DNA from: Aplysia californica
Lineage: Eukaryota
Assembly (NCBI RefSeq): GCF_000002075.1
Contig: NW_004797276.1
Coordinates: 2,239,950-2,303,949, forward strand
Length of the DNA stretch: 64,000 bases
Reading direction: 5' to 3'
Made by a program: the position numbers and the translations under genes. Under the pieces are notes generated by a model. That model made no database searches and was not told the origin of the DNA. It saw only the letters and a list, made by a program, of their open reading frames with translations. Below are positions 32,737-63,081 of this stretch, one piece after another. Position 1 is the first letter of the stretch; each line of letters starts with the position of its first letter.

Positions 32737-32769
32737 CTGGGAGAGACAAATGCACAAGTAGTAAGTACC

Positions 32770-35642: not shown

Positions 35643-35754
35643 TCTGACGAGAAACTTTCTTCTTCTGCATGCATATTCTTGATACAGTATTTGCAGAGAA
35701 AATGCATTTAGTCCGAACGAGCGCCTTTTCTAATATGGGCAACCGCTTAAATAA
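35643..35754 (-). CDS. Variable exon V1
   Basis: CAG/GTAAGT, 112 nt: LFKRLPILEKALVRTKCIFSANTVSRICMQKKKVSRQ. Confidence 0.88.
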
Positions 35755-36161
35755 CTGTCAAATACAAGCATCTGTGTGAGAACAATGCATAGCTCAACAG
35801 GCAGTACACATATCACTTAGCCCTTGATGCATGGTTTGACAAACTTTGGAAAAATCTTAACTTTAAAAAAGATGCCACATAGAGAGAACAGGAATAGGTT
35901 GCTCTACTATATGCAACAGAAAAATGTGTTCATCTTTATAAAACAAGCCATGAACGATGACAAGTCACCACTTGATGAAGCTATGTCCAATAGTCAACAT
36001 CAAACACTGGCCAAAAAGACAATTTCTGGGGCCTCTACAAGTCACTCCAGCAGCAAAAACAAACTTTTACTTTTTGAGAAATAAATTTACAGAAGTCAAC
36101 AAACTACCTTCAATTTGAACCAACTGTAAACAAGGAGTCTGAATGAATGTAACATCATTAC

Positions 36162-36261
36162 CTTTCTTTCGCTCTCGACAAAGTCGCTCACATGCCCTTT
36201 GGCGGAGGAAGTGCATAGTGCGAGCGAGATCATACCTCAGTAATGGGTGACGAGAGATGAG
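36162..36261 (-). CDS. Variable exon V2
   Basis: CAG/GTAATG, 100 nt: LISRHPLLRYDLARTMHFLRQRACERLCRERKK. Confidence 0.88.
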
Positions 36262-36511
36262 CTGAACAAATAAGCAAAATTGTATTCCCACATGTCTGTC
36301 ATACATACCCTTTTTTACTAAACAATTTCGCTCCCTGCTTACAATACACACAATCAATATTTGCCTGGAATATCATGGAGTATCACAAAAGTAGAACAAC
36401 TTTGAACCTCTCAAAATTGCCAATAACCTTAAGAATTTGGTACCTGGAGAAATCCTAGAAAATTACTGACAGGGACAAAAGAGGAATAATAATTCTTACT
36501 AATAAGATCAC

Positions 36512-36626
36512 CTGTAAATTGACACTTTCTATAAGTTCTTCTACTTTTCCGGTCTTTGGCAGTTTTCGCTAAATACCAAGAAGTTGTCTGGGAGCTGTAC
36601 CGCAGCAAAGGCATTCGGGCTACCAT
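36512..36626 (-). CDS. Variable exon V3
   Basis: TAG/GTGATC, 115 nt: MVARMPLLRYSSQTTSWYLAKTAKDRKSRRTYRKCQFT. Confidence 0.85.
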
Positions 36627-37214
36627 CTATTCAATTTCACCCACGAACATGGGGGAAACGGTGGGAAAGAGAAATAGCACTTGAAAAACACCCGAAAAAA
36701 ATTTAGAACAAAATTCACACTTTCTAAATGATTTGGTGCTTGACGTGAGTGGACATTACACTTTCAACCCCAAAAATCTCAACTTTGTTTGGAACATAGA
36801 ACTTGAACAAGAGCCTAAAAAAAACACACAAAAAAAAACCTTGCTTCGCCTCATAGAACTCAGAAATGATTATGGGGTATTGTTGAAAGAAACACAGACA
36901 ACACTGTAACGCACAGTCTGGAGGACACAGCAGGCCCGCAATACCATGAAGAAAAAAAAATAGTGGAAAGGTCTATAATTATTAAATATGCATTTGCTAA
37001 CCATTGCCAAATCCCACGACTCAAGAGGCTTGTGCTGCTTAAAAAAAATAAACAGCTCGACCTACCTATAACAGCCAGATAAAACCATGCAATCCAGCTC
37101 GAAAGTCTAGTGAGCAAACAGTACATCTGACACAACTGATTCAGTCACACACACAATAAAACCTTAATAAAATATAAAATGACTTCATTCACATCTAAAT
37201 AAAACTAGTTTTAC

Positions 37215-37320
37215 CTCTCACACGCTTTGTCCGATTGTAGTGCCTGTCATTTGCATTCTTTACGAATACTTGGCTTAGCCAGGACATATTTTTCTTTAAT
37301 AATGGTATCCGTCTTGTTAA
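37215..37320 (-). CDS. Variable exon V4
   Basis: TAG/GTAAAA, 106 nt: LTRRIPLLKKNMSWLSQVFVKNANDRHYNRTKRVR. Confidence 0.85.
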
Positions 37321-37596
37321 CTATACAAAGAAACAGTCCAAGTTGAAACAAGGTAAAAATACAATGAAAACTGACATTTGAACCCGAAAGACTTTAGGTG
37401 CTGTGACATTTTACCAATAATGCAATATTTCTCAATCTCTTCCAATCAAGTCTCAGATGTTTGCAATTTTGAAAAGCCACTGAATGAGACCTCTCCTCCA
37501 ATGGTTATAATAGCGAACGGTAATTACTGAAACTCGAAACCGGTGTGGTATATCCAAAATATAAAAAATACTTGAGAAAAATCTTTCAAATCTCAC

Positions 37597-37708
37597 CTTG
37601 ACACATAAGTGCCTTTTTATTCTTGCCTCTTCTATCTTTGGCAGTTTTGGCCAAGTACCACTCTGTTACACTGGCCTTGTACTTCAGAAGAGGCAGCCGC
37701 GCTAACAT
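37597..37708 (-). CDS. Variable exon V5
   Basis: CAG/GTGAGA, 112 nt: MLARLPLLKYKASVTEWYLAKTAKDRRGKNKKALMCQ. Confidence 0.88.
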
Positions 37709-38033
37709 CTGAATCATTACTCGGTGACAACATAATTCCCATCAAGAAGGTATGCACTTTAGAGTAGGAATAACCCCATAACCCTTTGACTACTTGGTGA
37801 AAGCTTCAATTTCATGCGTGCAAAAGTACAGCATAAGGGAACCAGATACAATACTAATCTTCAGAAAAAAGACTGTATGACGTTTCAAAATGCAGTCTAG
37901 CTTACACTTAGTTCTTTAACAAGAATGACAGTAACGAACAAGACTACGAAAAGACACAACATTTCGTGGGCTCATATCTTCTTCACACGAAGAATTCTTT
38001 ACTCAAAGAGTATGAACTGGGGTACAGTATTAC

Positions 38034-38133
38034 CTCGTTTACGACCTCTATACAGCCTTTCACATGTGCGCTGACAAAAAACAGCTGAAGTGCGTGTTTG
38101 GTCATACCTCAACAGAGGAACACGCATAAACAA
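38034..38133 (-). CDS. Variable exon V6
   Basis: TAG/GTAATA, 100 nt: LFMRVPLLRYDQTRTSAVFCQRTCERLYRGRKR. Confidence 0.88.
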
Positions 38134-38665
38134 CTACACCGGAGGGAAAAAACCAAAACAAGACAAACTCATTATGTTTCACACAATTGGACACTGCATC
38201 AATTTTCATTTTCTTCATAGAGTGTCATCACATATCTTCCCAGGAAGGTAAGCCCCTACCACATGCTTGTGATTTTGATGCTTTGATAGAATACTACGGA
38301 TTCATAGACACATAGCTACTTACGGCTGGAAATTCCCTATCGAAAAGATTTTACCAGCACCCGACATATTTCTTAAAATGGGCATATCACAGAAAAATTG
38401 TGTGTGTGTGTGCGTATGTGTGCGTGCATGTTTGTGTCCCCCCTCTCCCAAATCAGTGGGCTAACCAAAAACCCCCGAATTCAAGATCAAGAACAAAACC
38501 CATCTGCAAGCGACAAGAAGCAACAGAATGAACTCACCAACCCGTTAAAAAATATGAATGCAGCTTTGACACACCTCATACCAGACAAAGTCAGTAAACA
38601 TTGCAGGGGAGGGAAAGGTCTTAAAGAGACCTGAAACTTGTCCCACAATTAAAGATGCTGCTCAC

Positions 38666-38771
38666 CTTTGGAATAATAAACCTTTCTACTCTTTCTGTCA
38701 CTGGCTGTTTTGGCCAAGTACCACACTGCTCGGTGCACACTGTACTTCAAGATAGGTGTGCGCAACAACAC
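38666..38771 (-). CDS. Variable exon V7
   Basis: CAG/GTGAGC, 106 nt: VLLRTPILKYSVHRAVWYLAKTASDRKSRKVYYSK. Confidence 0.88.
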
Positions 38772-39131
38772 CTGGCTCACAGCAAAGACAATTTACAGAG
38801 ACTCCAGTATATTATACTTTACAATCATTAAGAGAAAGCCCAGTTACTTTTATTAATCCAAAAGGAAATCCCTGCTAAACAAAGTGAGGATCAAACTGTG
38901 GTGCAACAGATGGCCAGGAAGTACCTAGCACCTCAAGGAAAGAGAAACATCAAAACTTCTCCTTTAAAGTACCAGTTCATTATAAACAATAGAAAGTAGA
39001 AACAAGACAAGACTCGAAAGACAAAAGCAGAAAAAACTGCCACGGTCCTGAGACCAACTTTCTTACATTCTTAAACACCCCTGGAAGTAAAAATCGCTGA
39101 CTCAACAAATGGACCCAGTTGAACCACTCAC

Positions 39132-39249
39132 CTGCAAATTGTCTTCGCCTTCTGTGAGTCATTTCATACCTTCTGTGCTTTGCATTAATAGCCATGGTGG
39201 TCTCCAGACGCCTTACATTGTACCTTAACAAAGGCATACTCCTGACCAG
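39132..39249 (-). CDS. Variable exon V8
   Basis: CAG/GTGAGT, 118 nt: LVRSMPLLRYNVRRLETTMAINAKHRRYEMTHRRRRQFA. Confidence 0.88.
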
Positions 39250-40011
39250 CTGCAAAAATGTATCCTCTTATTCTATTACCCTTTAGACCAATGTCTAAAA
39301 GAAGACATTTTTTGTTCCATTTATTTACTCCCTTGACTTAAATAAAAATGACCAAGTAATGCCACTTGCCCGTCTTTCCTATTCTTAAAGAACAACATTG
39401 TAACACTTCAGTTCTGGATATTTCTAGACTAAAAGGCCATTTACACAACACCTAGCACTATATAGACCCAAGGAAAGCCAAACAAGAAAAACTAAATCAA
39501 GACCGGCTATTGGCTACCACTCCCTGTTTTTCAAAGTGTTATTACTTAGTCTCTTCCAACAATCCAAAAGAAAAGTCCATGCAAGGCAAAACCAAAGACA
39601 ATAGGTAGAGCCAATCAGAAAATATGACCATGTGAACAGGACCAGGGAAGCCTCTAAAAAAGTAATATTCAAATTGTACTTGTTATCGACCATCGCGCAT
39701 TGTAGTACATACTGAGAATTTGAGTATAAAAGTGCATTCTGAACACAAACTTTCCAGTCGTTGAAAGTCGAAGAACTGACACAAAGCAAACAGTAAAAAG
39801 CTGAATATTACCTTTGAAGATAGTAAGCATCTATAAGGAAAAAAAACCCAGCAGTTTCCATGGACAGAGAAACCAATGACAGAGACAGATCATATTCACA
39901 AAATTCTAACGGTTGAAAGGCAAGGACAAAGACAACAACACCACCATCATAACATCAACAATGATTGTTTCGGACACCAAGTACCGTTCTCAAAATCATG
40001 TGAACATGTAC

Positions 40012-40126
40012 CTCGGAGGCTTGGTCTGCAAGCTTTTCTACTGTATCTTCTGTCACTTGCATTTTTCGCAAGCATATATTGCAGTCGAAACATGCTAGCA
40101 CTCAACACAGGTATTCGTCTGATCAA
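40012..40126 (-). CDS. Variable exon V9
   Basis: CAG/GTACAT, 115 nt: LIRRIPVLSASMFRLQYMLAKNASDRRYSRKACRPSLR. Confidence 0.83.
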
Positions 40127-40242
40127 CTGTTGATGAGACACAGTAAACATAAATGTTGTCTGTGCTTGAAAAATGCCTTCGCTAACAAAGAAATTTACTC
40201 CAAACAGATGTTACCTCTTCATAGTTATTTAAAGGTACAAAC

Positions 40243-40354
40243 CTCTTGCTTTCAAACGGCGTGTCGAATCTGCTTTACGGTCACGAACACTTTTAGCAAG
40301 ATAGCCACTTACGAAAGGGATGTTAAGTCTAAGAACAGGAAATCTTAATAACAT
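40243..40354 (-). CDS. Variable exon V10
   Basis: CAG/GTTTGT, 112 nt: MLLRFPVLRLNIPFVSGYLAKSVRDRKADSTRRLKAR. Confidence 0.85.
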
Positions 40355-40529
40355 CTGAAAATGTATTTGTCGAATTAGGATGAGAACAAATTTATACCAA
40401 AGTCTTGAAAAATAAGAGCTCATTGCCTGGCACCTGGAGGTATCTGGTGAAACAACTCAAAAGTCACACGGAAGTGCATTTCATATTTTAGCCTCAGAAT
40501 TTATACTGACAGTTATTTTCTAAACTGAC

Positions 40530-40635
40530 CTTTCAAACGTCGAGCTAGATTTGCCCTCCTGTCCTGCGCAGTTTTAAGCAAATAAAAACTTGACAATTTC
40601 ACATTAAATTTCAGCAACGGCAGTCTTGAGACCAG
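40530..40635 (-). CDS. Variable exon V11
   Basis: CAG/GTCAGT, 106 nt: LVSRLPLLKFNVKLSSFYLLKTAQDRRANLARRLK. Confidence 0.88.
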
Positions 40636-41024
40636 CTGTCAAAACGAAAATAAAAAATATGAAAAAATAAAATTCTGCAGGATACACCCAAGTTTGCAGA
40701 CATTCATGCCAAGAGCATTTCTGAACAACAGTTGGTGCCTCAAGGCAAAATTTTATCTTGGATGTAATCAAAACATGACTGCCACTTCTCAGAGAGTAGA
40801 GACAAGAAGTCAAAAAGTGATATGAATACCGAGGATCCAAAAATGACAAGCTGATCAGCATAATTAGATAAAAAATAATAACCAGAAATAATTTTTTTTA
40901 AAAACTGCCTAGGGAGATCAAGACAATTCTACCATCCATACCACCAAATGGAACCATTATATATCTACTCAAGGTGCCAGAAGGAACCATGGACACAGAA
41001 AACTTCATACGGCCTTTTACCTAC

Positions 41025-41127
41025 CTTGATTTCTGCGGCTGTAACTACTTCGCCGTGCTGTCCTCACTCGAAGCATCCAACTGACATAATTTACATTGGC
41101 ACGCAGAACTGGTAACCGACGCAACAA
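41025..41127 (-). CDS. Variable exon V12
   Basis: CAG/GTAGGT, 103 nt: LLRRLPVLRANVNYVSWMLRVRTARRSSYSRRNQ. Confidence 0.88.
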
Positions 41128-41539
41128 CTGTGGCAACGTGATACACAAGAAAAATTCCTAATTCTATCCCATAAGTCAACTTACATTAAAAAAACAGGCA
41201 CTTTCTCAATCCCGTGCCAGCAGTGAAACTAGATGTGCTCGAGGGCCAGCAGTTAGTGAACTTTTGTAATGTCCAAACCAAAGAGACTTTTCAGCTTCTG
41301 CAGGACTCACCATCTGATCTTTTGTTATTGAGGAACTGAACAAAACTCTCTGAACCTTGACCTCCAAATATAAAAGTTAACCGCGCACGGTCAAAGGAGG
41401 TGAAAGAAATATTTTGAACCCTGAAAGTTTTGAAAATACACTTACAACCATTTTCTCTTTGTTTACAACATGCCAAAGCAGATCACTGGGAGATCACAAT
41501 ACATGACATACAGGGATTACCCCAGGGCTTTTTACATAC

Positions 41540-41642
41540 CTCGATTTCTGCGGTTGTAATTAGTTCGCCAGGCGGTCCTTACTCGAAGCAAATAACTCAC
41601 ATGTTCCACATTTGCACGAAGAAGTGGTAACCGTCTCAACAA
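41540..41642 (-). CDS. Variable exon V13 (close paralog of V12)
   Basis: CAG/GTATGT, 103 nt: LLRRLPLLRANVEHVSYLLRVRTAWRTNYNRRNR. Confidence 0.88.
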
Positions 41643-42107
41643 CTGACAACGCAATTCATAAGGTTTTTAATTGTTGCTTAGGTTTTACCAAGCTTCATTA
41701 TCCTTAAAAAATCTGTTTCATATGAAGGTGCTAGCAGTGAAACAATTCCTTAGCTCAGCAACCAACAGACACATGAACATGGACAAAATTAATATTTCTA
41801 GTTACTTTGATAGAGAAAGCACATTTTAACTCAGCCATACTGTTACAAGAAAAACTTAAGAGCTTTTACAAGACATTGGCTGACCCGACAGAAAAACCAG
41901 GATAAATTCCAAGAAGATATTTATCAGTGAATTTCATGTTTTGATGCGGCTCACTTATTAAAAACTTCCCAAGACAGAAACTAACATTTCGTCTCATCAG
42001 AGGAAAAGGTCCTTAATGTATTTCTAAAAATATGAAAAACACCCACAAGAAAAAAATTTAAGGATCATGCACCCAAAAAGTGTTGTGGCTGTAGCGAAAT
42101 CACAAAC

Positions 42108-42213
42108 CTTGAAATTTCTTTCTTTTTCGATAATGAATCTCTGCTGATCGAGCACTGAACAATGAAGTCACTCGCAAGGTGTCGTATCGAAGCAAAGGGA
42201 GGCGTGAGAAGAG
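42108..42213 (-). CDS. Variable exon V14
   Basis: CAG/GTTTGT, 106 nt: LFSRLPLLRYDTLRVTSLFSARSAEIHYRKRKKFQ. Confidence 0.87.
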
Positions 42214-43178
42214 CTGTTAGAGTGATACATGCTTTACTTGAGACCATAAAGCCGATATTGAAACCTACTTGCTTGAGGAATGCACAATAAATGAACTCAA
42301 AAGCCAAGTAGCAGAGCATCTAGCATCCTTAATGATCCAAAGTTCAAAGTAAACAAGACCTTCCTAGAACACTATTCACATCTTACTTATCAAAACAACC
42401 TGCCAAATACAAAGTAGGCAACTCAGAACTCTGAAATCAACACCTGAACTATAAGATGACAAAAATATCCTCCCCACAATATTAAGCACTGAAAGCAACC
42501 CCTACCCTCCACCTCCTGAAATGGATCCAAGGCACTGGTCTCGACTAGGTGATATAAATTGCAATGTGTGACTGAAATTTTTCTAAGGAGGCAACTGGCA
42601 AAACAAAACATGACTAGAACATCAACAAGAATAACGGAGACCACGTGAAAGCATTAGTTTTTACGTATAGTAAGTTTTACAGCGCTTGCAATTGTGAAAA
42701 ACGAGTTCATTTGCTTAAATTTTTAAAAAACTTTTTACTTAGAAATAGCTCAAAATATTTTAAAATACTAGAAAAAGCATCAAGTGCTATGAGACACATA
42801 TAGTCCATCAAAATCAATGGCAGACTTATGACTGTTAATTGCACAGTTCAAGTCAATGTCTCTGCTCAGTAGCAGTAAAAATGAAGGTGCTGCGGTGAAA
42901 TGGGTGACACCTTTACAAAAATCCTTCCTCAATAGTTACCAGAACAAGTTTAGCAAATTCCATGAGGTACACCAAGACCCAAAATACACCCCTTTAAAAA
43001 ATCCTTCTTGGCTGAAGGTTGGGTTACAAAGAAAACTTGGACATAAATCATTTGGAAGCATGTTTTTTTTTTATCATCGCTCTAATTTGACAGGTTTGAC
43101 AGGGGGGGAAAAATATATAATGTACGCATCATGTATGTGGGCGTTGAAAAATTCAAAAGATGAAGATTTCCATTGTAC

Positions 43179-43278
43179 CTCTCTTCTTTGCCTCATGATT
43201 TCTTGACCAAGTATTGTAACAAAATCTCGCTGAAACCCTTTTCACATCATATTGCAAAAGCGGCAGACGATGAAACAA
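43179..43278 (-). CDS. Variable exon V15
   Basis: CAG/GTACAA, 100 nt: LFHRLPLLQYDVKRVSARFCYNTWSRNHEAKKR. Confidence 0.85.
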
Positions 43279-44108
43279 CTGTCGAACAAGGATAGGTTGT
43301 GTTACGACATATGTGTTACAGCACTGCCAACACAGAAATGTCCGATGGAGCTTCAACAATGCTGTCAATCAATGCAACAAAGAACAGGGTAAACCCCACC
43401 CCAGGACAGGACGTGTCTACACTTATCTTAACTGGGCAAAAGACATCTTTTGTGAATAAAAAAGAATAGAAGAAAAGAATATCTGGTGCTGAGTGAACTC
43501 ACTATTGAATTAATATGCTACAATCACTCCAAACCTTGCATTAGTCCAACTAAAAACCAAGTATGTGCTCTCACTCCTTTCTTCATTGTTAGCACAACTG
43601 ATTTTAGAGCATAAACTCTGTACTCACTCTACAATACCGAAGCACTGAGTCTGTCCAAAGCAACAACATGCCCGTGCACTAACTTTAATATCAAAACAGC
43701 CATCATCATGTGAAATTCAGGACAAGCAAAACGGAAATCCCTTTGGATAGATCAAAGAAAAATCTCCCAAGAGTCCAGCAACTATTGCAAGACAAAAACA
43801 TACTGATACGGAGGTTCATCACATTTGGAACCAACAACAGGATATGACAACTTATGAATATTTCAGATTATCAGGACTGCGTGTCAAGTGGAAAATCAAA
43901 TGTTGCACACCCCACCCCTCTTTTAGAGTTCCATTGACAGCACAAGAATGAACAAATCAGAGAAAATAATACTTTCCTCTGACTGAGCTGGTTACAACTG
44001 TCTGCCTATGTACTGAATCATATACATATACACAAGAATTACTGCAGTTCATTGCACTTGCTCTATCAAGAGAAAAAATTTCTAGTCGGGTGACAATGAG
44101 AAGCCTAC

Positions 44109-44409: not shown

Positions 44410-44510
44410 TTGAGCTCTATACAGTAACAGAGTCCACGCCAATGTACTACTGAAATGTCCCGATCAGTCGTTTTTTATCAAGGCCCAAAAACAGGAATAT
44501 TAGCTACCAG
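44410..44510 (-). pseudogene. Pseudo-exon (dead paralog of V17/V18)
   Basis: Intact acceptor, then LVANIPV, a +1 frameshift, LGLDKKRLIGTFQ*. The flanking intron matches that of V17 and no donor is recognisable. Confidence 0.75.
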
Positions 44511-45012
44511 CTGCCAAATTCAAGAAAGGAGCAAATTAAATACTCCAGGAGCCCAATAACAACTAAACAGAGGGAGGGAAAGTCCTGTACAGACTTTTGC
44601 GAGACAAGAGACCTACTTGATGTATATGCCAGAACAGAACAGCATTATGCCTGCTGCCAACACAAAACAGAATTAAGCCTACAGATCCTTGCACCATGTA
44701 AGATGTAAACCTGTCAATGAGTCAGAATTGGAGCCTCATAAAAAAAAGAAAGAAAGATAGCAACATTTACAATAATTTCCTAAACAATACTGGCACAAAC
44801 AGCGCTGAATGAGCGAATGCACATATCCACCCACACACTCAAAGCCAATAGGACAACAAATCTCCAGGAGATACAACCTGCTATTATTGTTCCAACTGCC
44901 CGCCCAAGCATTCTGATTATCTTCTCTAATTCTAAAAGACCACGGTATGATCATTACAATATTTGTTTTAATCAGTTGAACTACAGAAAGACACAAGTAA
45001 ATCTAGACTTAC

Positions 45013-54415: not shown

Positions 54416-54527
54416 TGCTTAATCGTTGGCGGTGGAGCTTCACATGTCGTCTCGTCATGGCATTTTTATTCAAATATAAGGCCACCTTATCGAGCTGTCT
54501 TGTCAACTCAGGCATTCGCTTCAGTAA
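54416..54527 (-). CDS. Variable exon V34
   Basis: CAG/GTAAGT, 112 nt: LLKRMPELTRQLDKVALYLNKNAMTRRHVKLHRQRLS. Confidence 0.88.
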
Positions 54528-54641
54528 CTGACAATCAAAAGAGTAAAATTCTACAGGATAGCACTGATGCAGCACATGAGCCCTTTTGGCAGTTGGCAAG
54601 CAGTTAAAAACAAAAGAGCACAACCTTACAAGTCCACTTAC

Positions 54642-54753: not shown

Positions 54754-55627
54754 CTAATCAGAACGCAATTCAAGCACTTTAAGGAAAAATGTTAATACCA
54801 ACAGAGGAAAAGAGCCTTGCCAGGTGTGAAAGAAACTATGCCCGGGACAGAAAAATAACAGACATAACATGCACCCTCACATCATCTGAGCAGCAAAGTG
54901 AGAACTATGCTAACCAAAAAGAACCTGCCACTTCGACCCCTAGCGATTGACAGTCTCCTTGTTATGCCTAAGAAGACAACATTCAATGATTGAAAAACTT
55001 ATTCCGAACAAAGGCAATTTATATCCGAACGTTTACCAAAAAAGCAATAAATAAGGTTATGTTGAAACCATAAATTCAGAAACAGGGGCTCACGAAAGTG
55101 TATTTTAGAACTGAACAGTTCATACACAGACAATGACAAGGAGCTGGGAAAAGCAAGACCAGAAACAAAAAACCTGACAAGGAACGATATAAGATGATCA
55201 GTGTGCCACCTCCACATGTGTTCCCATTAATGAGGGCAGACAAAAGTCGTGAGGTACAACTACAAAAGGTGTCTTCTCCAGTCTTTTTAAATCTTTGGCA
55301 CAGTCCATTCAGACGACATAATCTTTCCATTCAATCATTTAATTCCTCAGACTTTCGAAATGTAAGAGCACTAATCAGGCCATCATATCACAAGACATCG
55401 GTTATCCAGAATACAGAAACGATGTCAAAGATTGTTGCAGACGACAACAGCAAGGCTTTGTTAATGAAAAAACCCATACTACCATAATTTAAAATCAAGA
55501 ACTAATTTTCTAATAATTTGACCCTGTGCAAGCCCAATGAGTAGAGAAACATCTTCCCAGCCCTCACCCTTCTAGAAAACAGGCAAACACATGACCTGAT
55601 ATTCAGCACCTGGAGTGCAGTACTTAC

Positions 55628-55748
55628 CATACATTTTGTTAAGTCGATCTCGGAAGAAACGTTGGCATCTACGTGACTTGGAACTTTGATGAAAGTAATT
55701 TGCCACACGAAGTATATCACACCCCATTATTGGCAGACGACTTACCAG
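55628..55748 (-). CDS. Variable exon V36
   Basis: CAG/GTAAGT, 121 nt: LVSRLPIMGCDILRVANYFHQSSKSRRCQRFFRDRLNKMY. Confidence 0.88.
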
Positions 55749-56462
55749 CTGAGAAGAAAATACTCCAGCTAAAATGTGATAACGGCTACCCCAGACAATA
55801 AAAAAGGTCGAGTAAAAAATATATAGACATAGCTACATAATTCTCTACAACTAAAACCACTTTCCAAACCAGAGCATGATAAAACAGTCAAGCACTAAAA
55901 GAAGTATGAAAGAAGACATAAGATTTGGTAAAGATGAGACAAGACACTGAAAGTGTCCAAAGAGCCCAACAAATCAATGCCTTTCTTTGTGGCAAGGACA
56001 AGTACATATTAAGTCATACTGAGAAAGAATCCAAACTCTATCCAAGCATGAAACAAAACTGAAATGGTCCATAAAGACAAAAATAATACGACAACCTTAA
56101 TGGAAGTAGACAAAAGTGGCAAAAAATATCACTAATCCAAATCAAATTACTCAAATCACAATCTTCAAAGAAACAGCCTTTAACAGGTACTTCAAGGCCA
56201 AACAAGTTTGTTGACAAATATTCAAAAACTGACCACACCTTTCATTTGACACTGCAATAATTCAATAGCTTTCCTACAAGTTTTTCACGACACCATGCCT
56301 CACAAACAAAAGGAAAAGCAAAACATTCCACAACGAGCCAGGTGGGAATTCATTAACATCCCAGTCTGACAGTAACTTCATAATCTCAAAAACACTTGCC
56401 CCACACATTCACCAGCCACTGATGCACACTCTTTCTTACGATTTCATTTGAAAAGCACTTAC

Positions 56463-56568
56463 TTCTTAACCGAAACGATCGCATTAAGCGCCTAGCTTTA
56501 CTGTTATGACAAAGAAGGCGCCCAGCTGTGACAGGATTCAGATTCAGGATTGGTAACCGTTTTAGAAG
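56463..56568 (-). CDS. Variable exon V37
   Basis: TAG/GTAAGT, 106 nt: LLKRLPILNLNPVTAGRLLCHNSKARRLMRSFRLR. Confidence 0.88.
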
Positions 56569-57024
56569 CTAAAACAGGCCAAAAAAAAAGAGGTAAAACA
56601 AAATCAATCTCTATATCAGCTGACCTTTCCATCGACATCTTTCAATGAAATTTCCACAATGAACATTAAAACAACGATAAAGAAAAGCCTAATGTACTAG
56701 AAAATACAATGAAAAAAGCATGGCCATCTTGACTTGGTGAGGTGAACAGAAACCTCCAAAGTAGAAACTTCCATCCAGGACGTATTTTCTATAAGACATG
56801 AAAAGAGCCAATAGGAGGAATCAGTGAAGTGGGACTATTTGTTACTTACTCTGTACAATTGTACTAAGGTTAATTTCTATCACTACTTAAGAGACACAAA
56901 AAATGGTATTGGTTCTGTACTCACAAGACAACTTACGATTTCTGTCACTGACTCAATAAACTACAAACATAAACAAAAGACCTAAACACTAGTCAGCAAA
57001 ATGCTGTACATACGAAGTACTTAC

Positions 57025-57136
57025 TGCTACATTTGAGTCGCCAGTTTCTCATGGTATTTTTTGACATACACCTACGATAAAGAAGATCCATTGTTCTATG
57101 AAAATTTCTCTTCAATACAGGCAGCCTGGAGAAAAG
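57025..57136 (-). CDS. Variable exon V38
   Basis: CAG/GTAAGT, 112 nt: LFSRLPVLKRNFHRTMDLLYRRCMSKNTMRNWRLKCS. Confidence 0.88.
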
Positions 57137-57434
57137 CTGATGACAAAGAACTAATTCTTAAGTTGTATACACCCAAATTGCACCAATAACAATGAACAGT
57201 AAGCAAACTAATGACAGAGCCTTTTTGGAATTGTTGCAGGCAACAAGTAACATCATGAGACAAGTGCTGCATTATATCATCAGCTGAAATCACCTATTAC
57301 AAGGAGTACACCAAAGATGCTTTACAGGTCGACTCTTAACAACAACACAGATGATCTACTTGCTCCTATCAGGAACAGACAGATATTAAATGCACAGGCT
57401 GCCAACGTCCAAATAAACCTTAAAATGTACTCAC

Positions 57435-57543
57435 TAGACTTTTTTAATTTCTTGGCATATAAGACACGTGAGCGAGAGTTTTGATAAAGGCAATTTTCCA
57501 CCCAAGCTGGAGCTGCTCTCAGAACAGGGAGACGTCTCAGAAG
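57435..57543 (-). CDS. Variable exon V39
   Basis: TAG/GTGAGT, 109 nt: LLRRLPVLRAAPAWVENCLYQNSRSRVLYAKKLKKS. Confidence 0.88.
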
Positions 57544-57712
57544 CTACAAGTGAAAGAAAATACAAATCACTGGGACACTGACATTCTCCTTAAGGACTCG
57601 CCCTTCGCTGAAGATGGTGTGTGGCCTCCTAATGCCATGCTTATTTAGAACACAAAGGTAAACCCAGAATAGCAGTATCCTTAGATGGACATATTCTTTT
57701 TTTTTCACTTAC

Positions 57713-57830
57713 TGCTTTTGAGATTTCGACACCGCTTGCTCCTCATGTAAACTTTATTGCGAGAATTTGTGTACATAAGATGCTCAGCCCGATCATAATC
57801 CATCAGAAGGCACGGCAAACGTTTAAACAG
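57713..57830 (-). CDS. Variable exon V40
   Basis: CAG/GTAAGT, 118 nt: LFKRLPCLLMDYDRAEHLMYTNSRNKVYMRSKRCRNLKS. Confidence 0.88.
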
Positions 57831-58482
57831 CTGAAGTGAAAGACAAACACGACCTTGTATCTATATTGACCAACTCTATGGTGCTATGGTGACGAAAAAT
57901 TACCCTTCAATGCCTTTCTCAAGCAGGGAAGACTGCCGTAAATCGTAAAAGAAATTGGTCCAAAGTACTTAACATTCACATACATGTGCATTTTTAGGAT
58001 GGCTGTACGCATTATCACACATGAGAACAAGACTAAACCCAGAATAAGAAAAGCGACTACAAAAGACAACCAACTTCTATTTAGAGTCTAATATGAAAAC
58101 AAGACAAGAAAAACAGAACAAAACTTGACTTCTCTTGTTCAAAGTACAAAAACAAAAAATTGATCAGGTAAAAAAGACATTCACAAAATAAAACACAAAA
58201 ACTACTGGCTTTCGTAAAACAACTCCCTTACATCCAATAAATGTACGTGCATGCAGGTGCAATGTACCTTTTGAACTCTTTGGTAAATTTCTGCTCCACA
58301 CATTATGAGGCCCTACACTCGCGGTTATTCAAAACAATGGAATCATGTCCATTTTTTCTTTTGTACTGACCCAGGTATGTTTCTCAATTCCCCCCTTGGA
58401 AAACCTATATTTCAACAGAAGCTGCTGTAAAAAGATGGTCATATATTACTACTGAGTCTGAGCCTTGTAGGAACCAACTTAC

Positions 58483-58603
58483 TTCTTTGTTGAGCTTGAG
58501 CTAAGCGCTTAGACCTCATGTGCATCTTGATCCGACAATTGGTATACAAAACTTCTGATGTTCTGATGATGTCATGAGATAAGATTGGCAGCCTGGCCAG
58601 TAG
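58483..58603 (-). CDS. Variable exon V41
   Basis: TAG/GTAAGT, 121 nt: LLARLPILSHDIIRTSEVLYTNCRIKMHMRSKRLAQAQQR. Confidence 0.88.
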
Positions 58604-58678
58604 CTAGGATTCAGAAAATGAACACATAAGGACTTCGAACTTGTGTGAAATTTGTATTGTGAGTCAAATGTTTCTCAC

Positions 58679-58787
58679 CTGCATTTTTTGTTCTGGATCT
58701 CATATAGATCTTGTGGTAGGTTTTTTTGTGCAAAAGAAACTCAGCTCTGCCTCTGTTTTGTTTCAATATTGGCAAACGACGAAACAA
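58679..58787 (-). CDS. Variable exon V42
   Basis: CAG/GTGAGA, 109 nt: LFRRLPILKQNRGRAEFLLHKKTYHKIYMRSRTKNA. Confidence 0.88.
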
Positions 58788-59156
58788 CTGATGTTTGAGA
58801 GAAAAACGAAGTAAATTTGAGGTAGACAGACTAACTACAACTAACAAAACACAAAAAATGTCAATCAACACCATGTCCGCACCTTACTTCATTTTCTTTG
58901 ACAGTCTTGAACCATTATATGCCAATTCTACTCGAGTTTTACACACAGACACCATTACCTCTTTTCTCTAACAACTCCGTCAATTGATCAAACAAACCAG
59001 CCACTGCATTTCCAGCAAGCAATAGAGCTCAAAAACACTTAAAACACACAGTCAGTTCTTTTTAGAGTTTTGGTTGAAATCCATTACATCTAAACTCTCT
59101 AAGAAACTAATGGATTCTCTTCTACATAGTACAAAACTAGTTTACCAAGGACATAC

Positions 59157-59268
59157 CTCTAACTATTTGACGAGACTGTCTGCGCCTCATTTTCTCGTAA
59201 CAGTTTATACGCATAATGCACTCAGTTTTTCCAACATTACCCATCAAGATGGGCAACCGATGAAACAA
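59157..59268 (-). CDS. Variable exon V43
   Basis: CAG/GTATGT, 112 nt: LFHRLPILMGNVGKTECIMRINCYEKMRRRQSRQIVR. Confidence 0.88.
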
Positions 59269-59609
59269 CTGAAGAGGAAAGGATGGGAGGAGAAAGAATA
59301 ATTGTCATAAACATCTTGTCCTACTGCTCCGTAACAAACCAAGTGTGAGCCCTGATGACCCTTTAAAATGTGTGGTTTCTTTAGTTTCTTCGAAGATATC
59401 AGCCAGTTAACCTAATCCTTTTCACTGAACAAAACAGAAAGTACCGTCCATTTTTTCTTACATCTGAAGCAACCTTCACTTAAACCTATCAATATCTGGA
59501 ACCTACTCCATACCTAAAGGACAAAACTTTTCCTGAAAAGATCACCAACAGAACTACCTCAACATCAGATGATACATTTACTGAGAGAAGCCAACAGAAA
59601 ACACAATCA

Positions 59610-59694
59610 TCAGTTTACAAGAACTTGCTCTTGACTAGTATTTGAAAAGAAGACAAGGTACATTTTTTTTTAAAATTGGGAGTACTTTAAATAA
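59610..59694 (-). pseudogene. Probable pseudo-exon (acceptor lost, internal stop)
   Basis: LFKVLPILKKNVPCLLFKY*SRASS, preceded by ttttgtcc instead of AG. Confidence 0.5.
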
Positions 59695-59968
59695 GGACAA
59701 AACCGTGACTGAACAAGATCTACAGAACGAACTGAATGGACCGTACCACCAAATGAAGCAAGTAAACACGGTCACCTGATACCCGTTACATAAAATATCA
59801 GCATCAGTAACATCCAAACAATTTTAGGAAATCCATATCGGTCCCACTATTTTTGGCTCACTAACTACCCCATCCATATTATGCAGTTCAGCACTTTGGT
59901 AACTGACTTGTAGACTACTTTTTTAACAATTGAGTGTCAAAACGGACGAACTAATAAAAAAAATATAC

Positions 59969-60074
59969 CATCAAACTTCATCCTCCATCTCGAAACCCTT
60001 TTCTTTCCATTTGTGTAAAGAATTTCAGTACATCTCTCTCGCCAGGCAGCAAGAATTGGAATGCGCCGCAAAAG
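59969..60074 (-). CDS. Variable exon V44
   Basis: TAG/GTATAT, 106 nt: LLRRIPILAAWRERCTEILYTNGKKRVSRWRMKFD. Confidence 0.86.
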
Positions 60075-60517
60075 CTAGGAATGGACAGAATAACAAATTT
60101 AGGGGGAAATGACACAGTTAACCACCATCTTACACTGTAGTTGCCTGTCCCGGTCCCTGTACATTCTCCTCATGCTGTTTATATAAAAATTGTCCACAAC
60201 TGATGAGCACCTTGCTTGCAATATTGGCATTCGCCTAAATAGCTGAGATACAATGAAGGATACACTTTAAAAGAGTGTGCGTTTGATACTAGCCCTTCTG
60301 AAGTTGTTGCACTATCGTCACCACTAGCATAAAGAGCACTCACTAGCATAAAGAGCACAAATAAAAGCTTTTGCATCTCCAATCTGTCTGATAACTATTT
60401 TCTACAAGTTAGAAAGGACCTTAAAAATTGATCTACAAAAATTGTCTGTGGCACACCTTGCTATTTTAGGTTTTAAAAAACTAGAAACTGCTTGATCAAC
60501 ATTCAGTGGTGACTTAC

Positions 60518-60614
60518 CCTGTTTCTGCCTTTGCACTCTCCTCATACAGTTAACATACAAGTATTGCTGTGTGCGTTCTATGCTGTACTGAAGAACGGGC
60601 AAGCGACTAACCAT
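60518..60614 (-). CDS. Variable exon V45
   Basis: CAG/GTAAGT, 97 nt: MVSRLPVLQYSIERTQQYLYVNCMRRVQRQKQ. Confidence 0.88.
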
Positions 60615-60855
60615 CTGGAGTATAGTTGCATTGGTAAAATATTTCAGACTGACCATGCGGAACAATAGCTGAAGTCAGTTTACTCCAAATCATACAGTAC
60701 TGTGGCGAGCGAGTTAGGAATTCAGTATTATCAAAACCTGAAGCCCCATAGTTAGCATGCACTGTTTTATTAGTCAACATTTGCTATTTATCAGCTCAAA
60801 AAGATTTCATTTCACCAATATATCACTGAGTAAATACTACACACTACGTACTTAC

Positions 60856-60967
60856 TTTTGTAAGTTGCCCTCAGGCGTCTTTTTTGCATTTTCCGAGTTG
60901 CATTAATATAGAAAGTCTCCAGTGCTCTTTTGCGGTGGTATGTGAGGACAGGCATACGGAGGAAAAG
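60856..60967 (-). CDS. Variable exon V46
   Basis: CAG/GTAAGT, 112 nt: LFLRMPVLTYHRKRALETFYINATRKMQKRRLRATYK. Confidence 0.88.
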
Positions 60968-61208
60968 CTGGCATTTTGAAAGTAAGTTGGAGGTGACAAC
61001 AAAGAGAATTACAGTAAAAGTAGAGAATTGATCTACAGGAACAACTTGGTCACAATTTCATAGAAAACAGCACCTGAGCTTAACTTCAAGTTTGCAATCC
61101 CTTCCATCGTTTCCACTCACTACATAAAAGTTCCGACTCAAAAACAACAAGAATAGTGGGGCAATTCAAACTTTCATGTGACAGTCAACAGCTGTTTAGC
61201 GTACTTAC

Positions 61209-61335
61209 GGTCTTTCATCATCATTGCATGAGTCCTGGTCTGCCTCCACCTGCGAGAGTTTCTACCTGCCCTCTCGTTGAACATATGCTCTACTCTAAGG
61301 GCATCCTCTCGCAACAAAGGCAAGCGGCCGAAAAG
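61209..61335 (-). CDS. Variable exon V47
   Basis: CAG/GTAAGT, 127 nt: LFGRLPLLREDALRVEHMFNERAGRNSRRWRQTRTHAMMMKD. Confidence 0.88.
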
Positions 61336-61477
61336 CTGAACAGAACGAGAATGAACATTCACTAAGCTCTCCCAGAGTTTACTTCTCGCTGTAATCCCTT
61401 ACACGGGAACCACAGTGAACTCAACAAAAAGAGAACCTTGCCAAAACTGAGATCACTGTGCTTATTCTTTTACTTAC

Positions 61478-61595
61478 TCCACTGAGCTGCAGACTTGTTC
61501 ATCCGCTGAAGCTGATTTCTCTTCCTTGCATTGACATACATTACTTCTTGAGCACGAAGCGCACTGCAGCGAAGTTGAGGCATTCTATTAAATAA
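61478..61595 (-). CDS. Variable exon V48
   Basis: CAG/GTAAGT, 118 nt: LFNRMPQLRCSALRAQEVMYVNARKRNQLQRMNKSAAQW. Confidence 0.88.
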
Positions 61596-61752
61596 CTGGG
61601 ATCACAAAGGAGGGGAAAAATCAGTCTCTTCAAAAATGTTCGGAATTCAAGGGTTACCTCAGAGATAGATCACCCTCAACTTGAACTATAAGATGCAAAT
61701 GCAAACAGCAGCATCTCAGGATGTAAATCAAAGACAAACGATAGAAACTCAC

Positions 61753-61870
61753 TGAAACCAATATCTTTTTGTCTACAGCGCCTCACTGACATCTTCTTCA
61801 TGCTGTTTGCATAGAACAGTGCCTCTGTCCGCAGCGAGTTTTGAGCAAGAACAGGTATTCGTAGATACAA
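61753..61870 (-). CDS. Variable exon V49
   Basis: CAG/GTGAGT, 118 nt: LYLRIPVLAQNSLRTEALFYANSMKKMSVRRCRQKDIGF. Confidence 0.88.
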
Positions 61871-62344
61871 CTGTGCAACACGAAAGATCATGATTATCCA
61901 GAGAAGACAAAACACAGATGGAAGTATGAAGTAAGATCGTCATTCAAACTATACAAGGATTTCCCTCATTTACAGTTTAGTGTTGTGGTCTCAGCCACAG
62001 CCACAATCTATAATATATTTTGGTCCAAGTACAAAAAAATATTTTTGTCTGTCTCTTTTTCTTCATCAATGGTTTTTCGTCCTGGGTTTTATTCTTAAAT
62101 TATCTGTTTGTTCTCCAGCCTGAACCCAGCACACTTTATTCGTGTGGTTGAAACAGGCATATATATCAGTACTTCTTTACTGTTTACACATGTCGTACTG
62201 AGTAAAATTACCAGGAGAACTTTCCCCTGTCCAAGTATATTTTGAAACTTTCAAGCTAAAATTTGTATGCTAAGGCATACCAGTGAAAAGTGGCATACAG
62301 TATTATCTCTGAAATTTCTCTCGATCTCCATCTGCAGCCTGTCA

Positions 62345-62412
62345 GTTTCAGCGCATTGAGCACTTTTTTGTGGAAATGCGCTATATAAATGCAATTTATT
62401 ATTATTATTATT
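62345..62412 (+). mobile_element. Short L2-type retroposon 3' tail inside an array intron
   Basis: cagcgcattgagcac...gcgctatataaatgcaatt(tat)n, similar to 960-1045. Confidence 0.55.
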
Positions 62413-62975
62413 CTCTTCCAGGAACTCTTTTCATTCTTTGTCTACATTGACCATGCACACAACCACGCCCTCTTTTAGCACTAGCCAGCCCTCTGATTCT
62501 TTGTGGAAGTACTTAGCTGAAGAAGTAATAACTAACTTTCACCCTGAATGAGAATCTGTGTGTCAATTGCATAAATGTCATCAGAATCATGGCACTATTT
62601 CCCAGAGCTTTTACATTATTTCAATCCATAAAAAACTCATTTAACACCTCTCAGCTGTGTAAGATTTCTTTGCCATCATTCATAATATTAAAATCAACTG
62701 ACCTACATTCGAATGAGAACCATTACGGTTTGAATTGAGCATTAGATTATTATCTTAGAGTTCTCTCTTCGACATTACTTTAGCGAGGGAAATCATTGAG
62801 ATAAAATAGCACAATTAATCTATTTGCAGTATCAATTCAAATAGGGAATCCCTATATGTTGGCAGCTGGAGATGAATCGTGAGCACAAAAATTCCTGTGC
62901 GTGGTACCAAATGTGTGAATCGCTGGCCAAAACAACTATTAGAGAGTAAATCAGTCTATTTCATAAACAACTCAC

Positions 62976-63081
62976 TTTTGTCCCTGCAGCGTCTGTATGA
63001 CAACTTTGCTGAGCAGTTCTTAATAAAATACAAGCTCGCACGCTTATAACAGCTACTGAGAATAGGCATCCGTGAAAATAT
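62976..63081 (-). CDS. Variable exon V50
   Basis: CAG/GTGAGT, 106 nt: IFSRMPILSSCYKRASLYFIKNCSAKLSYRRCRDK. Confidence 0.88.

What the first reader, a model, noticed from the sequence alone, without database searches (positions are those of the whole stretch)
35643..63081. The variable module looks like a swappable DNA-recognition helix (BEN/DUF4806-like C-terminal helix)
Structural positions are conserved (Leu1, Arg4, Pro6, Leu8, hydrophobic/aromatic at about 15, 18 and 19). Positions about 16-30 are hypervariable and rich in R/K/N/Q/T/S, ending in a basic tail. Several copies read (W)YLAKTAKDR(R/K), which I recall as resembling the end of BEN/DUF4806-type domains. Established: in BEN domains such as Drosophila Insensitive, the C-terminal helix reads bases in the major groove. 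Inference: splicing swaps DNA specificity on a common scaffold, giving a transcription factor or chromatin repertoire from one locus, possibly for cell identity or transposon recognition.
Basis: inference. Interest (0 to 1): 0.85.

Follow-up and report, generated by a model that had tools for sequence, protein, structure and literature searches.

The report
51 swappable exons in snail gene
One sea-hare gene holds 51 alternative small exons, only one of which goes into each mRNA, and each gives a different basic end-helix to an otherwise invariant small helical domain; this probably yields about 50 nuclear proteins with different binding specificities, on the scale of insect Dscam.

Summary
Window 35643-63081 (minus strand) holds 51 homologous exons. 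All have AG/GT splice sites, are 97-127 nt long, have length 3n+1 and contain no stop codon. They occur nowhere else in the 927-Mb genome.

They are the mutually exclusive exon cluster of Aplysia californica LOC101860137, an 'uncharacterized protein' with at least 33 RefSeq isoforms. Orthologous clusters exist in Biomphalaria, Physella, Lymnaea, Bradybaena and Elysia.

Each exon follows a 51-residue segment that is invariant across these snails. In the AlphaFold model it supplies the end of one helix, a Pro turn and a long basic helix (mean charge +7.4). A roughly 165-residue disordered acidic tail follows, so the module is not at the protein's C-terminus.

Positions 16-30 are 17% identical between paralogous exons but 75% identical between orthologous exons, as expected of specificity determinants.

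BEN/DUF4806 membership is not shown. Pfam finds nothing in 79 family members and the fold searches find no match. A profile comparison with a true BEN domain is co-linear but weak (P about 0.03-0.06).

DNA binding is inferred, mainly from paralogues that carry alternative zinc-finger ends. Splicing-swapped specificity on a common scaffold is well supported. I found no paper describing this locus.

The parts
35643..63081 (-). Cluster of 51 mutually exclusive V exons of LOC101860137. Each codes L-x-x-R-x-P-x-L, then a loop, then a basic helix.
   Evidence: Exon coordinates (high-low, minus strand): 63081-62976, 61870-61753, 61595-61478, 61335-61209, 60967-60856, 60614-60518, 60242-60134, 60074-59969, 59268-59157, 58787-58679, 58603-58483, 57830-57713, 57543-57435, 57136-57025, 56568-56463, 55748-55628, 54753-54642, 54527-54416, 54148-54043, 53629-53524, 53278-53161, 52318-52216 (RefSeq uses a donor 12 nt earlier), 52130-52031, 51722-51614, 51053-50948, 50544-50433, 49605-49500, 49426-49330, 49018-48919, 48686-48587, 48364-48259, 47361-47256, 46535-46427, 45996-45897, 45112-45013, 44229-44109, 43278-43179, 42213-42108, 41642-41540, 41127-41025, 40635-40530, 40354-40243, 40126-40012, 39249-39132, 38771-38666, 38133-38034, 37708-37597, 37320-37215, 36626-36512, 36261-36162, 35754-35643. 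All have AG/GT and length 3n+1. They are the only 51 matches in the genome. 14 of the 15 listed RefSeq isoforms use one of these exons exactly as predicted, and the 15th differs only in its donor.
54416..54527 (-). V exon used by RefSeq isoform X8 (P0126); 112 nt.
   Evidence: Joining seven GT-AG exons, including this one, reproduces P0126 residue for residue (tblastn map).
60856..60967 (-). V exon with the best-conserved orthologues.
   Evidence: 89% identical to the V segment of isoforms from Biomphalaria, Physella and Bradybaena. Residues 13-33 are unchanged.
33832..33981 (-). Constant exon 6 (150 nt, phase-1 acceptor and phase-1 donor). It is the common splice target of all V donors and starts the disordered Q/P/G-rich tail.
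   Evidence: Phase-1 acceptor scan. Exact reconstruction of P0126. The split codon (last V base + GC) gives the G/S/R/C seen after each V in the isoforms.
32387..32736 (-). Terminal coding exon 7 (includes the stop codon). It encodes the acidic tail that ends in D/E-rich ...FELIEIDPDDDDDI.
   Evidence: The tail motif is nearly invariant across gastropods.
44440..44511 (-). Decayed V copy (pseudo-exon). An AG acceptor and the start LVANIPVF are kept, R4 is lost, and one frameshift and stops follow.
   Evidence: Weak nhmmer hit at 44465-44514. Three-frame reading.

Best explanation
The region is the variable-exon cluster of a single Aplysia californica gene, LOC101860137, transcribed on the minus strand.

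GENE STRUCTURE. Four constant 5' coding exons lie just outside the window, at window-equivalent coordinates 75570-74808, 72360-72208, 70784-70711 and 69117-69037. They encode an N-terminal domain of about 75 residues that is shared with a family of gastropod zinc-finger genes, then a long disordered linker, then an invariant 51-residue helical segment that ends in phase 0.

SPLICING RULE. The pre-mRNA then takes exactly one of 51 V exons (phase 0 in, phase 1 out) and joins it to constant exon 6 (phase-1 acceptor) and exon 7. Every V exon is 3n+1 long. Skipping V, or including two V exons, therefore breaks the frame, so only one-exon products are productive.

PROTEIN. The V exon supplies the last turn of helix 3, an R-x-P turn and a helix of about 29 residues. 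One face of that helix (positions 12, 15, 18/19, 22/23) is conserved and presumably packs on the invariant scaffold. Its exposed positions differ between exons and its end is strongly basic.

PROPOSED FUNCTION. Each isoform is a nuclear regulator whose nucleic-acid (most likely DNA) recognition helix has been exchanged. One gene then encodes about 50 binding specificities on one scaffold.

STATUS OF EACH STEP. Shown: the exon set, its phases, its use one at a time in annotated and assembled transcripts, and its conservation. Modelled: the helical layout. Inferred: packing, nuclear role and DNA recognition.
For: EXONS AND PHASES. There are 51 exons, all with AG/GT and all 3n+1. The cluster is unique in the genome.

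GENE IDENTITY AND ONE-AT-A-TIME USE. P0126 is XP_005089527.1, LOC101860137 isoform X8, in a cluster of 33 isoforms on a contig of 3,590,776 bases, which is the length of the window's contig. Seven GT-AG exons reproduce P0126 exactly. The 15 listed isoforms differ only in V, and 14 use my predicted exons exactly. Transcript-derived proteins from other snails (P0004, P0125, P0197-P0201) carry exon 3-4 joined to a single V. Biomphalaria isoform X43 (P0129) skips V and reads the tail out of frame, as the phases predict.

CONSERVATION. The 51-residue scaffold is invariant in 22 sequences from at least six gastropod species. In 22 cross-species exon pairs, positions 16-30 are 75% identical, against 17% between Aplysia paralogous exons. 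Loop positions 9-15 are only 36% identical between the same pairs.

STRUCTURE. The AlphaFold2 model has helices 35-46, 50-65, 71-87, 89-93 and 95-123 of P0123. pLDDT is 84-93 over the V part.

NUCLEIC-ACID READING. Net charge is +7.4, and 48% of residues at 16-30 are R/K/N/Q/T/S. Paralogues with the same N-terminal domain carry dozens of alternative C2H2 zinc-finger ends. The tail has psi-K-x-E sites and an acidic hydrophobic motif of the kind typical of nuclear regulators (sequence; that reading is my own knowledge). A weak co-linear match places V on the base-reading helix alpha5 of BEN.
Against: No experiment or computation here shows DNA binding.
- The models have low pTM (0.17 and 0.23), so a compact fold is not established.
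- phmmer against 1.84 billion proteins finds only 20 family members and fragments, so there is no characterised relative to lean on.
- Three Aplysia poly(A) RNA-seq runs show essentially no reads over the exons of 32001-38000, so expression and exclusivity rest on RefSeq models and on other species' transcript assemblies.
- A basic amphipathic helix could equally bind RNA, acidic proteins or membranes.
- No docking/selector RNA pairing was found that would explain how one exon is chosen.
Confidence: 0.55

Rival explanations
1. The variable helix is a protein-protein specificity code. Each isoform would pair with itself or with a particular partner, giving a nuclear analogue of Dscam or protocadherin isoform matching, or a bZIP-like partner choice. 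It would not read nucleic acid.
For: The hydrophobic positions 12, 15, 19, 22/23 and 26 follow a 3-4 spacing that could also build a coiled coil. The top, non-significant structural neighbours are coiled coils and bZIP helices. Conservation in orthologues with variability in paralogues fits any recognition function.
Against: A net charge of +7.4 with only 7% acidic residues in the variable part is unusual for a self-pairing surface, because like charges repel. The paralogues swap DNA-binding zinc fingers at the equivalent place.
Confidence: 0.17
2. The V helix is a basic tether that reads no DNA sequence. It would be an arginine-rich RNA-binding motif, a binder of nucleosome acidic patches or chromatin, or a variable signal for nuclear or subnuclear localisation. 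The exon choice would then tune affinity or localisation rather than DNA sequence choice.
For: The helix has a strongly basic tail and conserved R26 and R30-33. The conserved acidic C-terminal tail could fold back on it, as in proteins with auto-inhibitory acidic tails (sequence; the idea is inference).
Against: Simple tethers rarely need about 50 distinct versions. Nor do they usually keep each exposed, non-basic position fixed for the whole divergence of heterobranch snails: positions 16-30 are 75% identical in orthologues, and the exon at 60967 has residues 13-33 unchanged in four species.
Confidence: 0.15
3. The domain is a true but very divergent BEN domain, and V is its helix alpha5. It is compatible with the best explanation but is a separate claim about ancestry.
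For: hhalign of the domain profile against the BEN region of Aplysia 'polyhomeotic-proximal chromatin protein' is co-linear over 84 columns at 25% identity. It aligns ...GK(R/K)..., the helix before the conserved Pro, and V onto ...RLERLVWKNCVDR... Only 10 of 300 column shuffles reach its score. The lengths are similar (about 90 residues) and both are all-alpha with a long last helix.
Against: hhalign gives a probability of 0.9% and P = 0.06. There is no Pfam BEN hit in 79 members at E<=10. No BEN chain appears among the fold-search rows shown. The two N-terminal beta-strands of BEN are not predicted. The template profile came from a single orthologue group.
Confidence: 0.3
4. The cluster is mostly neutral duplication. 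Only a few exons would matter and the rest would be annotation noise.
For: One decayed copy exists. Neighbouring exons are more alike than distant ones: mean identity is 0.34 at lag 1 and 0.24 at lag 40. This shows ongoing tandem duplication. No reads were found in three RNA runs.
Against: 51 of 52 copies keep the acceptor, the donor, an open frame and the 3n+1 length. RefSeq isoforms use exons spread along the whole cluster, from 35754 to 60967. Many exons have one-to-one counterparts in distant snails.
Confidence: 0.03

Closest known systems
Dscam1 exon-6 cluster of insects (48 mutually exclusive exons of about 124 nt)
   Same: Both are tandem arrays of about 50 homologous internal exons of one length class. 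In both, the frame rule allows only one exon per mRNA, the exon supplies part of a domain on a constant scaffold, and some exons have orthologues across long evolutionary distances.
   Different: Dscam exons encode half of an extracellular Ig domain used for homophilic recognition. Exon choice there uses docking-site/selector RNA pairing (PMC3535345, PMC6071210; seen only as listing entries, not read). Here the product has no signal peptide or membrane segment and looks nuclear. The exon encodes a basic helix, and no shared intronic element or docking complementarity was found.
Drosophila lola and mod(mdg4) loci (my own knowledge of these loci)
   Same: One locus with a common N-terminal module yields dozens of isoforms that differ in a DNA-binding part. 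The gastropod paralogues of this gene do exactly that with C2H2 finger pairs.
   Different: lola and mod(mdg4) use alternative 3' terminal exons (partly by trans-splicing) that carry whole domains behind a BTB domain. This gene has no BTB (no Pfam hit). It uses an internal cassette and swaps only the last helix of a domain.
BEN domain (PF10523; NACC1, BANP, BEND3, Insensitive)
   Same: Both are all-alpha units of about 90 residues whose long C-terminal helix is the candidate reader. In BEN, alpha5 is the only helix in the major groove (PMC11472053). There is a weak co-linear profile alignment.
   Different: There is no HMM match, no structural match and no predicted N-terminal beta-strands, so membership is not established. 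No known BEN gene swaps alpha5 by splicing, as far as I know.
Skn-1 / CNC and Maf 'support helices plus basic helix' DNA-binding units (my own recollection, not tested here)
   Same: Short support helices hold a long C-terminal basic helix that binds the major groove without a zipper.
   Different: The bZIP basic-region signature is absent and there is no Pfam bZIP hit. No structural match to such entries stands out.

Membership tests
Mutually exclusive exon cluster (Dscam-type tandem array) | Tandem homologous internal exons with the same splice phases and a similar length | tested here: met
   51 exons, all AG/GT, phase 0 in and phase 1 out, 97-127 nt.
Mutually exclusive exon cluster (Dscam-type tandem array) | Exactly one exon of the cluster in each mature mRNA | tested here: met
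   All 15 listed RefSeq isoforms and all transcript-derived proteins of other snails carry one V. Zero or two V exons shift the frame. Direct Aplysia reads gave no coverage, so this rests on annotation and on other species' assemblies.
Mutually exclusive exon cluster (Dscam-type tandem array) | Docking-site/selector competing RNA structures | tested here: inconclusive
   No 9-mer is shared by more than 6 of the 50 introns apart from T-rich words. The best 'docking' candidates are a poly-G run and GT-rich low-complexity words that pair with pyrimidine tracts. These simple scans cannot exclude weak or gapped pairings.
BEN domain (PF10523) | Match to the Pfam BEN model | tested here: not met
   No hit at E<=10 in 5 and then 79 family members. 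A genome-wide BEN search finds hits only on contigs C573 and C1683.
BEN domain (PF10523) | Fold of two beta-strands plus five alpha-helices, superposable on solved BEN domains | tested here: inconclusive
BEN domain (PF10523) | Profile-profile similarity to a bona fide BEN domain | tested here: inconclusive
   hhalign score 15.3, P 0.063, 84 columns, 25% identity. 3.3% of 300 column shuffles reach that score.
BEN domain (PF10523) | C-terminal helix inserted in the DNA major groove | not testable with these tools
   This needs binding assays or a complex structure.
DUF4806 (PF16064) | Match to the Pfam model | tested here: not met
   No hit in 79 members. No match anywhere in the genome, although the control genomes did not match either.
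lola / mod(mdg4)-type BTB loci | Common N-terminal BTB domain and alternative 3' terminal exons | tested here: not met
   No BTB or any other Pfam family on the constant part. The V exons are internal and have donors. Only the logic is shared.
bZIP basic region | Pfam bZIP match / N-x7-R basic-region signature followed by a zipper | tested here: not met
   No bZIP family among the Pfam hits. The basic stretch is followed by a disordered Q/P/G-rich tail, not by heptads.

The most novel reading that the evidence does not exclude
Heterobranch gastropods run a Dscam-scale, one-of-51 splicing system inside the nucleus. It exchanges the base-reading helix of an orphan (possibly BEN-derived) DNA-binding domain on a frozen scaffold, so a single gene encodes about 50 sequence-specific transcription or chromatin factors. 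Each specificity would have been conserved throughout the divergence of these snails. The system could provide a combinatorial cell-identity or genome-defence code.
Probability: 0.4. Interest if true: 0.92.

Novelty: new variant of a known kind. Interest (0 to 1): 0.8.

Why it matters
Very large mutually exclusive exon clusters are known almost only from arthropod Dscam, where they diversify a cell-surface receptor. This locus applies the same genomic device to what looks like a nuclear regulator. It swaps only the presumed recognition helix of a domain, not a whole domain.

If the helix reads DNA, the locus is a natural library of about 50 recognition helices on one invariant scaffold, with orthologous sets in several snail genomes. 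That would be a ready-made system for learning a recognition code. It would also allow tests of how exon choice is controlled without a Dscam-type docking site, and of whether neurons or other cells of a classic neurobiology model (Aplysia) express individual isoform sets.

The total invariance of the 51-residue scaffold fits the idea that it must suit about 50 partner helices at once.

The gene is annotated only as 'uncharacterized protein'. The paper searches found no description of it.

Tried and rejected
RNA EVIDENCE. I laid three Aplysia poly(A) RNA-seq runs and one contig run on 32001-38000. Almost all laid reads belong to two short repeats (32771-32801, 35349-35395). The exons have about zero depth, so this gave no splice evidence either way.

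EXON-CHOICE MECHANISM. A shared intronic k-mer scan and an antiparallel-complementarity scan of both flanking constant introns against the 50 internal introns found only low-complexity signals.

HOMODIMER TEST. I ran a homodimer prediction on the helical domain (residues 28-128 of P0123, two copies). It returned no verdict: score 0.26, below the mark of 0.32, with controls not run. It is not evidence for or against binding.

REJECTED EARLY IDEAS.
- Alternative terminal exons: each V has a donor and the frame continues into exon 6.
- A repeat protein that reads through all exons: the 3n+1 length forbids it.
- A bZIP basic region followed by a zipper: the downstream exons are disordered.
- Joining V to a downstream 'BEN module': a paralogous N-terminal exon on the plus strand at about -41.4 kb, plus-strand zinc-finger exons, and the exact RefSeq model of this gene ending at 32387 all argue that module belongs to the convergent neighbour.

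OTHER. The look-up of encoding contigs for the divergent homologue P0204 found no record. I sent no self-joined spliced model to any search or folding tool. All searches and folds used database proteins or single exons by reference. The only joining was a local check that seven exons reproduce P0126.

Full report
WHAT IS THERE.

On the minus strand of window 35643-63081 a peptide pattern recurs about every 490 bases: L-x-x-R-x-P-x-L, then a short loop, then a basic stretch. A profile HMM built from the first 46 copies and run over all six frames found five more. It found nothing above 7 bits elsewhere in the window or on the plus strand.

All 51 copies start right after an AG that follows a pyrimidine-rich tract, and end at a GT with consensus AG|GTAAGT. 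They are 97-127 nt long. Every length is 3n+1 and none contains a stop. The introns between them are 59-1105 nt.

A six-frame search of the whole 927-Mb assembly with the 51-row alignment returns these 51 places and no other. One further, decayed copy lies at about 44440-44511. It has lost R4 and has a frameshift and stops. The stated coordinates are exactly the first base of the first exon and the last base of the last exon.

WHICH GENE.

The window is G000:C6:2239950-2303949, on a contig of 3,590,776 bases. An open frame 11.7 kb upstream (minus strand) matches many gastropod proteins.

A second search, restricted to the C-terminal part of a transcript-derived homologue (P0004), found 'uncharacterized protein LOC101860137 isoform X8 [Aplysia californica]' (P0126, XP_005089527.1). 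It stands for a 90%-identity cluster of 33 isoforms on a contig of exactly that length.

The same search found equivalent isoform swarms in other snails:
- Physella acuta: LOC131934887, 49 cluster members.
- Biomphalaria glabrata: LOC106053932, 43 members.
- Bradybaena similaris: two loci.
- Lymnaea stagnalis and Elysia.

Seven GT-AG exons reproduce P0126 residue for residue (tblastn map):
- Exon 1: 75570-74808.
- Exon 2: 72360-72208.
- Exon 3: 70784-70711.
- Exon 4: 69117-69037.
- V exon: 54527-54416.
- Exon 6: 33981-33832.
- Exon 7: 32736-32387.

I did this joining only inside a local script, as a check. No self-joined model was sent to any search or folding tool. Those used database proteins or single exons by reference.

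ONE EXON PER MESSAGE.

The 15 listed Aplysia isoforms are identical except in the V segment. 14 of them use one of my predicted exons exactly, and the 15th uses a donor 12 nt earlier, also 3n+1. The exons used are spread from 35754 to 60967.

Exon 4 ends in phase 0 and exon 6 begins in phase 1. The residue after V is G, S, R or C, as expected from the last V base plus GC.

Skipping V shifts the frame. Biomphalaria isoform X43 (P0129) shows exactly that out-of-frame tail. Two V exons would also shift it.

Transcript-assembly proteins from other species (P0004, P0125, P0197-P0201) carry exon 3-4 spliced to a single V.

My own attempt at direct evidence failed. Three Aplysia poly(A) RNA-seq runs give about zero depth on the exons in 32001-38000, and the reads that did map belong to two short repeats.

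I found no docking/selector RNA elements. How one exon is chosen is therefore open. Four introns shorter than 90 nt could prevent splicing between some neighbouring exons, and the frame rule removes the other wrong products. Both points are inference.

WHAT THE EXON ENCODES.

V follows the segment ...LTRAQQEELEMYYRKGTDQHLTFLRNMREAHAMYPFTGKRDKELFDKALAE. This segment is invariant in all 22 aligned sequences from Aplysia, Physella, Biomphalaria, Lymnaea, Bradybaena and an Elysia-like species.

AlphaFold2 on the Elysia protein P0123 with a 79-row alignment predicts helices 35-46, 50-65, 71-87, 89-93 and 95-123. pLDDT is 63-74 over the constant part and 84-93 over the V part. An earlier model of P0126 gave the same helices with lower confidence.

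V thus gives the last turn of helix 3, the R-x-P turn, a short turn-helix and the long final helix. About 165 disordered Q/P/G-rich and acidic residues follow. The helix is therefore C-terminal in the domain, not in the protein.

Within V, conserved positions (1, 2, 4-8, 12, 15, 18, 19, 22/23, 26) fall on one helical face. Most other positions between 13 and 29 have 3-4 bits of entropy. Mean net charge is +7.4.

CONSERVATION PATTERN.

61 V segments from other snails were compared with the 51 Aplysia exons. 22 of them have a single clear counterpart, and these map to 14 different Aplysia exons. The exon at 60967 is 89% identical in three other species, with residues 13-33 unchanged.

In those 22 pairs, positions 16-30 are 75% identical, against 17% among Aplysia paralogous exons. 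Loop positions 9-15 are only 36% identical.

The pairs were chosen by overall identity, so the absolute level is partly circular. The contrast between positions is not.

Positions that are hypervariable between exons but fixed within each exon lineage behave as specificity determinants under purifying selection. Neighbouring exons are more alike than distant ones (Spearman -0.22), consistent with growth by local duplication.

IS IT BEN OR DUF4806?

Sequence and fold searches find neither family:
- Pfam finds nothing in five and then 79 family members at E<=10.
- BEN hits in the genome lie on other contigs, and DUF4806 is not found at all.
- PDB sequence-profile searches find nothing.
- phmmer of P0123 against 1.84 billion representatives finds only 20 family members and fragments.

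As a direct test I compared the domain profile with the BEN region of a genuine Aplysia BEN protein and its orthologues. The alignment is co-linear over 84 columns at 25% identity and places V on the BEN C-terminal segment ...RLERLVWKNCVDR... However, hhalign gives P = 0.063, and 3.3% of 300 column-shuffled templates score as high.

I put it at about 0.3.

WHY A DNA-RECOGNITION READING IS STILL THE BEST GUESS.

The N-terminal roughly 75 residues are shared with a gastropod gene family. Its members join that domain to dozens of alternative C2H2 zinc-finger ends, with up to 37 isoforms per gene in Physella, Biomphalaria and Babylonia.

Such paralogues flank this gene:
- Zinc-finger-pair exons lie upstream on the minus strand, at window-equivalent 99.6-110 kb.
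- A convergent plus-strand paralogue starts at about -41.4 kb and has plus-strand finger exons.

In this family the alternatively spliced part is the DNA-binding part. Here, the equivalent part is the V helix. Its basic, N/T/S/R-rich exposed face suits nucleic-acid contact.

None of this is a measurement. Rival readings remain open: a protein-pairing code, an RNA or chromatin tether, or a localisation signal. A homodimer prediction for the domain gave no verdict.

RELATION TO KNOWN SYSTEMS AND NOVELTY.

In genomic logic this is a Dscam-type mutually exclusive cluster of comparable size. In biological logic it resembles lola and mod(mdg4), which produce many DNA-binding isoforms from one locus. 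It differs from those in three ways: it uses an internal cassette, it has no BTB, and it exchanges only one helix of a domain.

The locus is present in RefSeq as an uncharacterised multi-isoform gene. Searches by locus name and by topic found no paper on it.

I class it as a new variant of a known kind. The exon cluster and its one-at-a-time use are solid. The helical layout is modelled. DNA recognition and BEN ancestry are hypotheses with stated tests.

Noticed in passing
window 44440-44511 (-): A decayed V exon. The acceptor and the start LVANIPVF are kept, R4 is lost, and a one-base frameshift and stops follow.
   Followed up: partly
L011:8534-9352 (+), i.e. about 41.4 kb before the window start; also L010:7317-7685 (+): A paralogous N-terminal exon (56% identical over the first 74 residues) lies on the plus strand. 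Plus-strand C2H2 finger-pair exons follow it (Pfam zf-H2C2_5 and zf-C2H2). This is a convergent neighbour gene of the same family, running towards this window.
   Followed up: partly
window 2876-3748 (+): A 291-residue open frame rich in short S/R-L-P/A repeats (SRLP, SDLA, GRV...). It has no Pfam match. It may be a further terminal exon of the plus-strand neighbour.
   Followed up: partly
L006:6647-7318 (-) and L007:5726-6151 (-), window-equivalent 100.6-110.2 kb: Several minus-strand open frames each hold a pair of C2H2 fingers (Pfam hits). They look like alternative terminal exons of yet another paralogue upstream. RefSeq LOC101845285 (P0118) is on the same contig but not within the 174 kb examined.
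   Followed up: partly
It gave no Pfam family at E<=0.01.
   Followed up: partly
window 32771-32801 and 35349-35395: Two short repeat fragments attract thousands of partly matching RNA-seq reads (95-99% identity, many with poly(A) continuations). They are probably pieces of an abundant transcribed interspersed element and produce false 'joints' between the two sites.
   Followed up: no
about window 67640-67655 (outside the window, in L002), intron after constant exon 4: A run of 13 G. In a G-U-tolerant scan it pairs with the pyrimidine tracts of 30 of the 50 V introns. This is most likely a low-complexity artefact, but it is the only recurrent complement found.
   Followed up: partly
window 18460-25750, both strands: At least six copies of an element encoding ...LAQREKWPILLC... 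occur in both orientations, some next to assembly gaps (N runs at 19589-19688 and 20563-20813). It is a repeated mobile element in the intergenic space downstream of the gene.
   Followed up: no
C-terminal tail, exons at window 33832-33981 and 32387-32736 (-): The tail carries a psi-K-x-E site (DIKYE) and a hydrophobic core flanked by acidic runs (FELIEIDPDDDDDI). Both are nearly invariant across snails. By my own knowledge they resemble a SUMO acceptor site and a SUMO-interacting motif.
   Followed up: no
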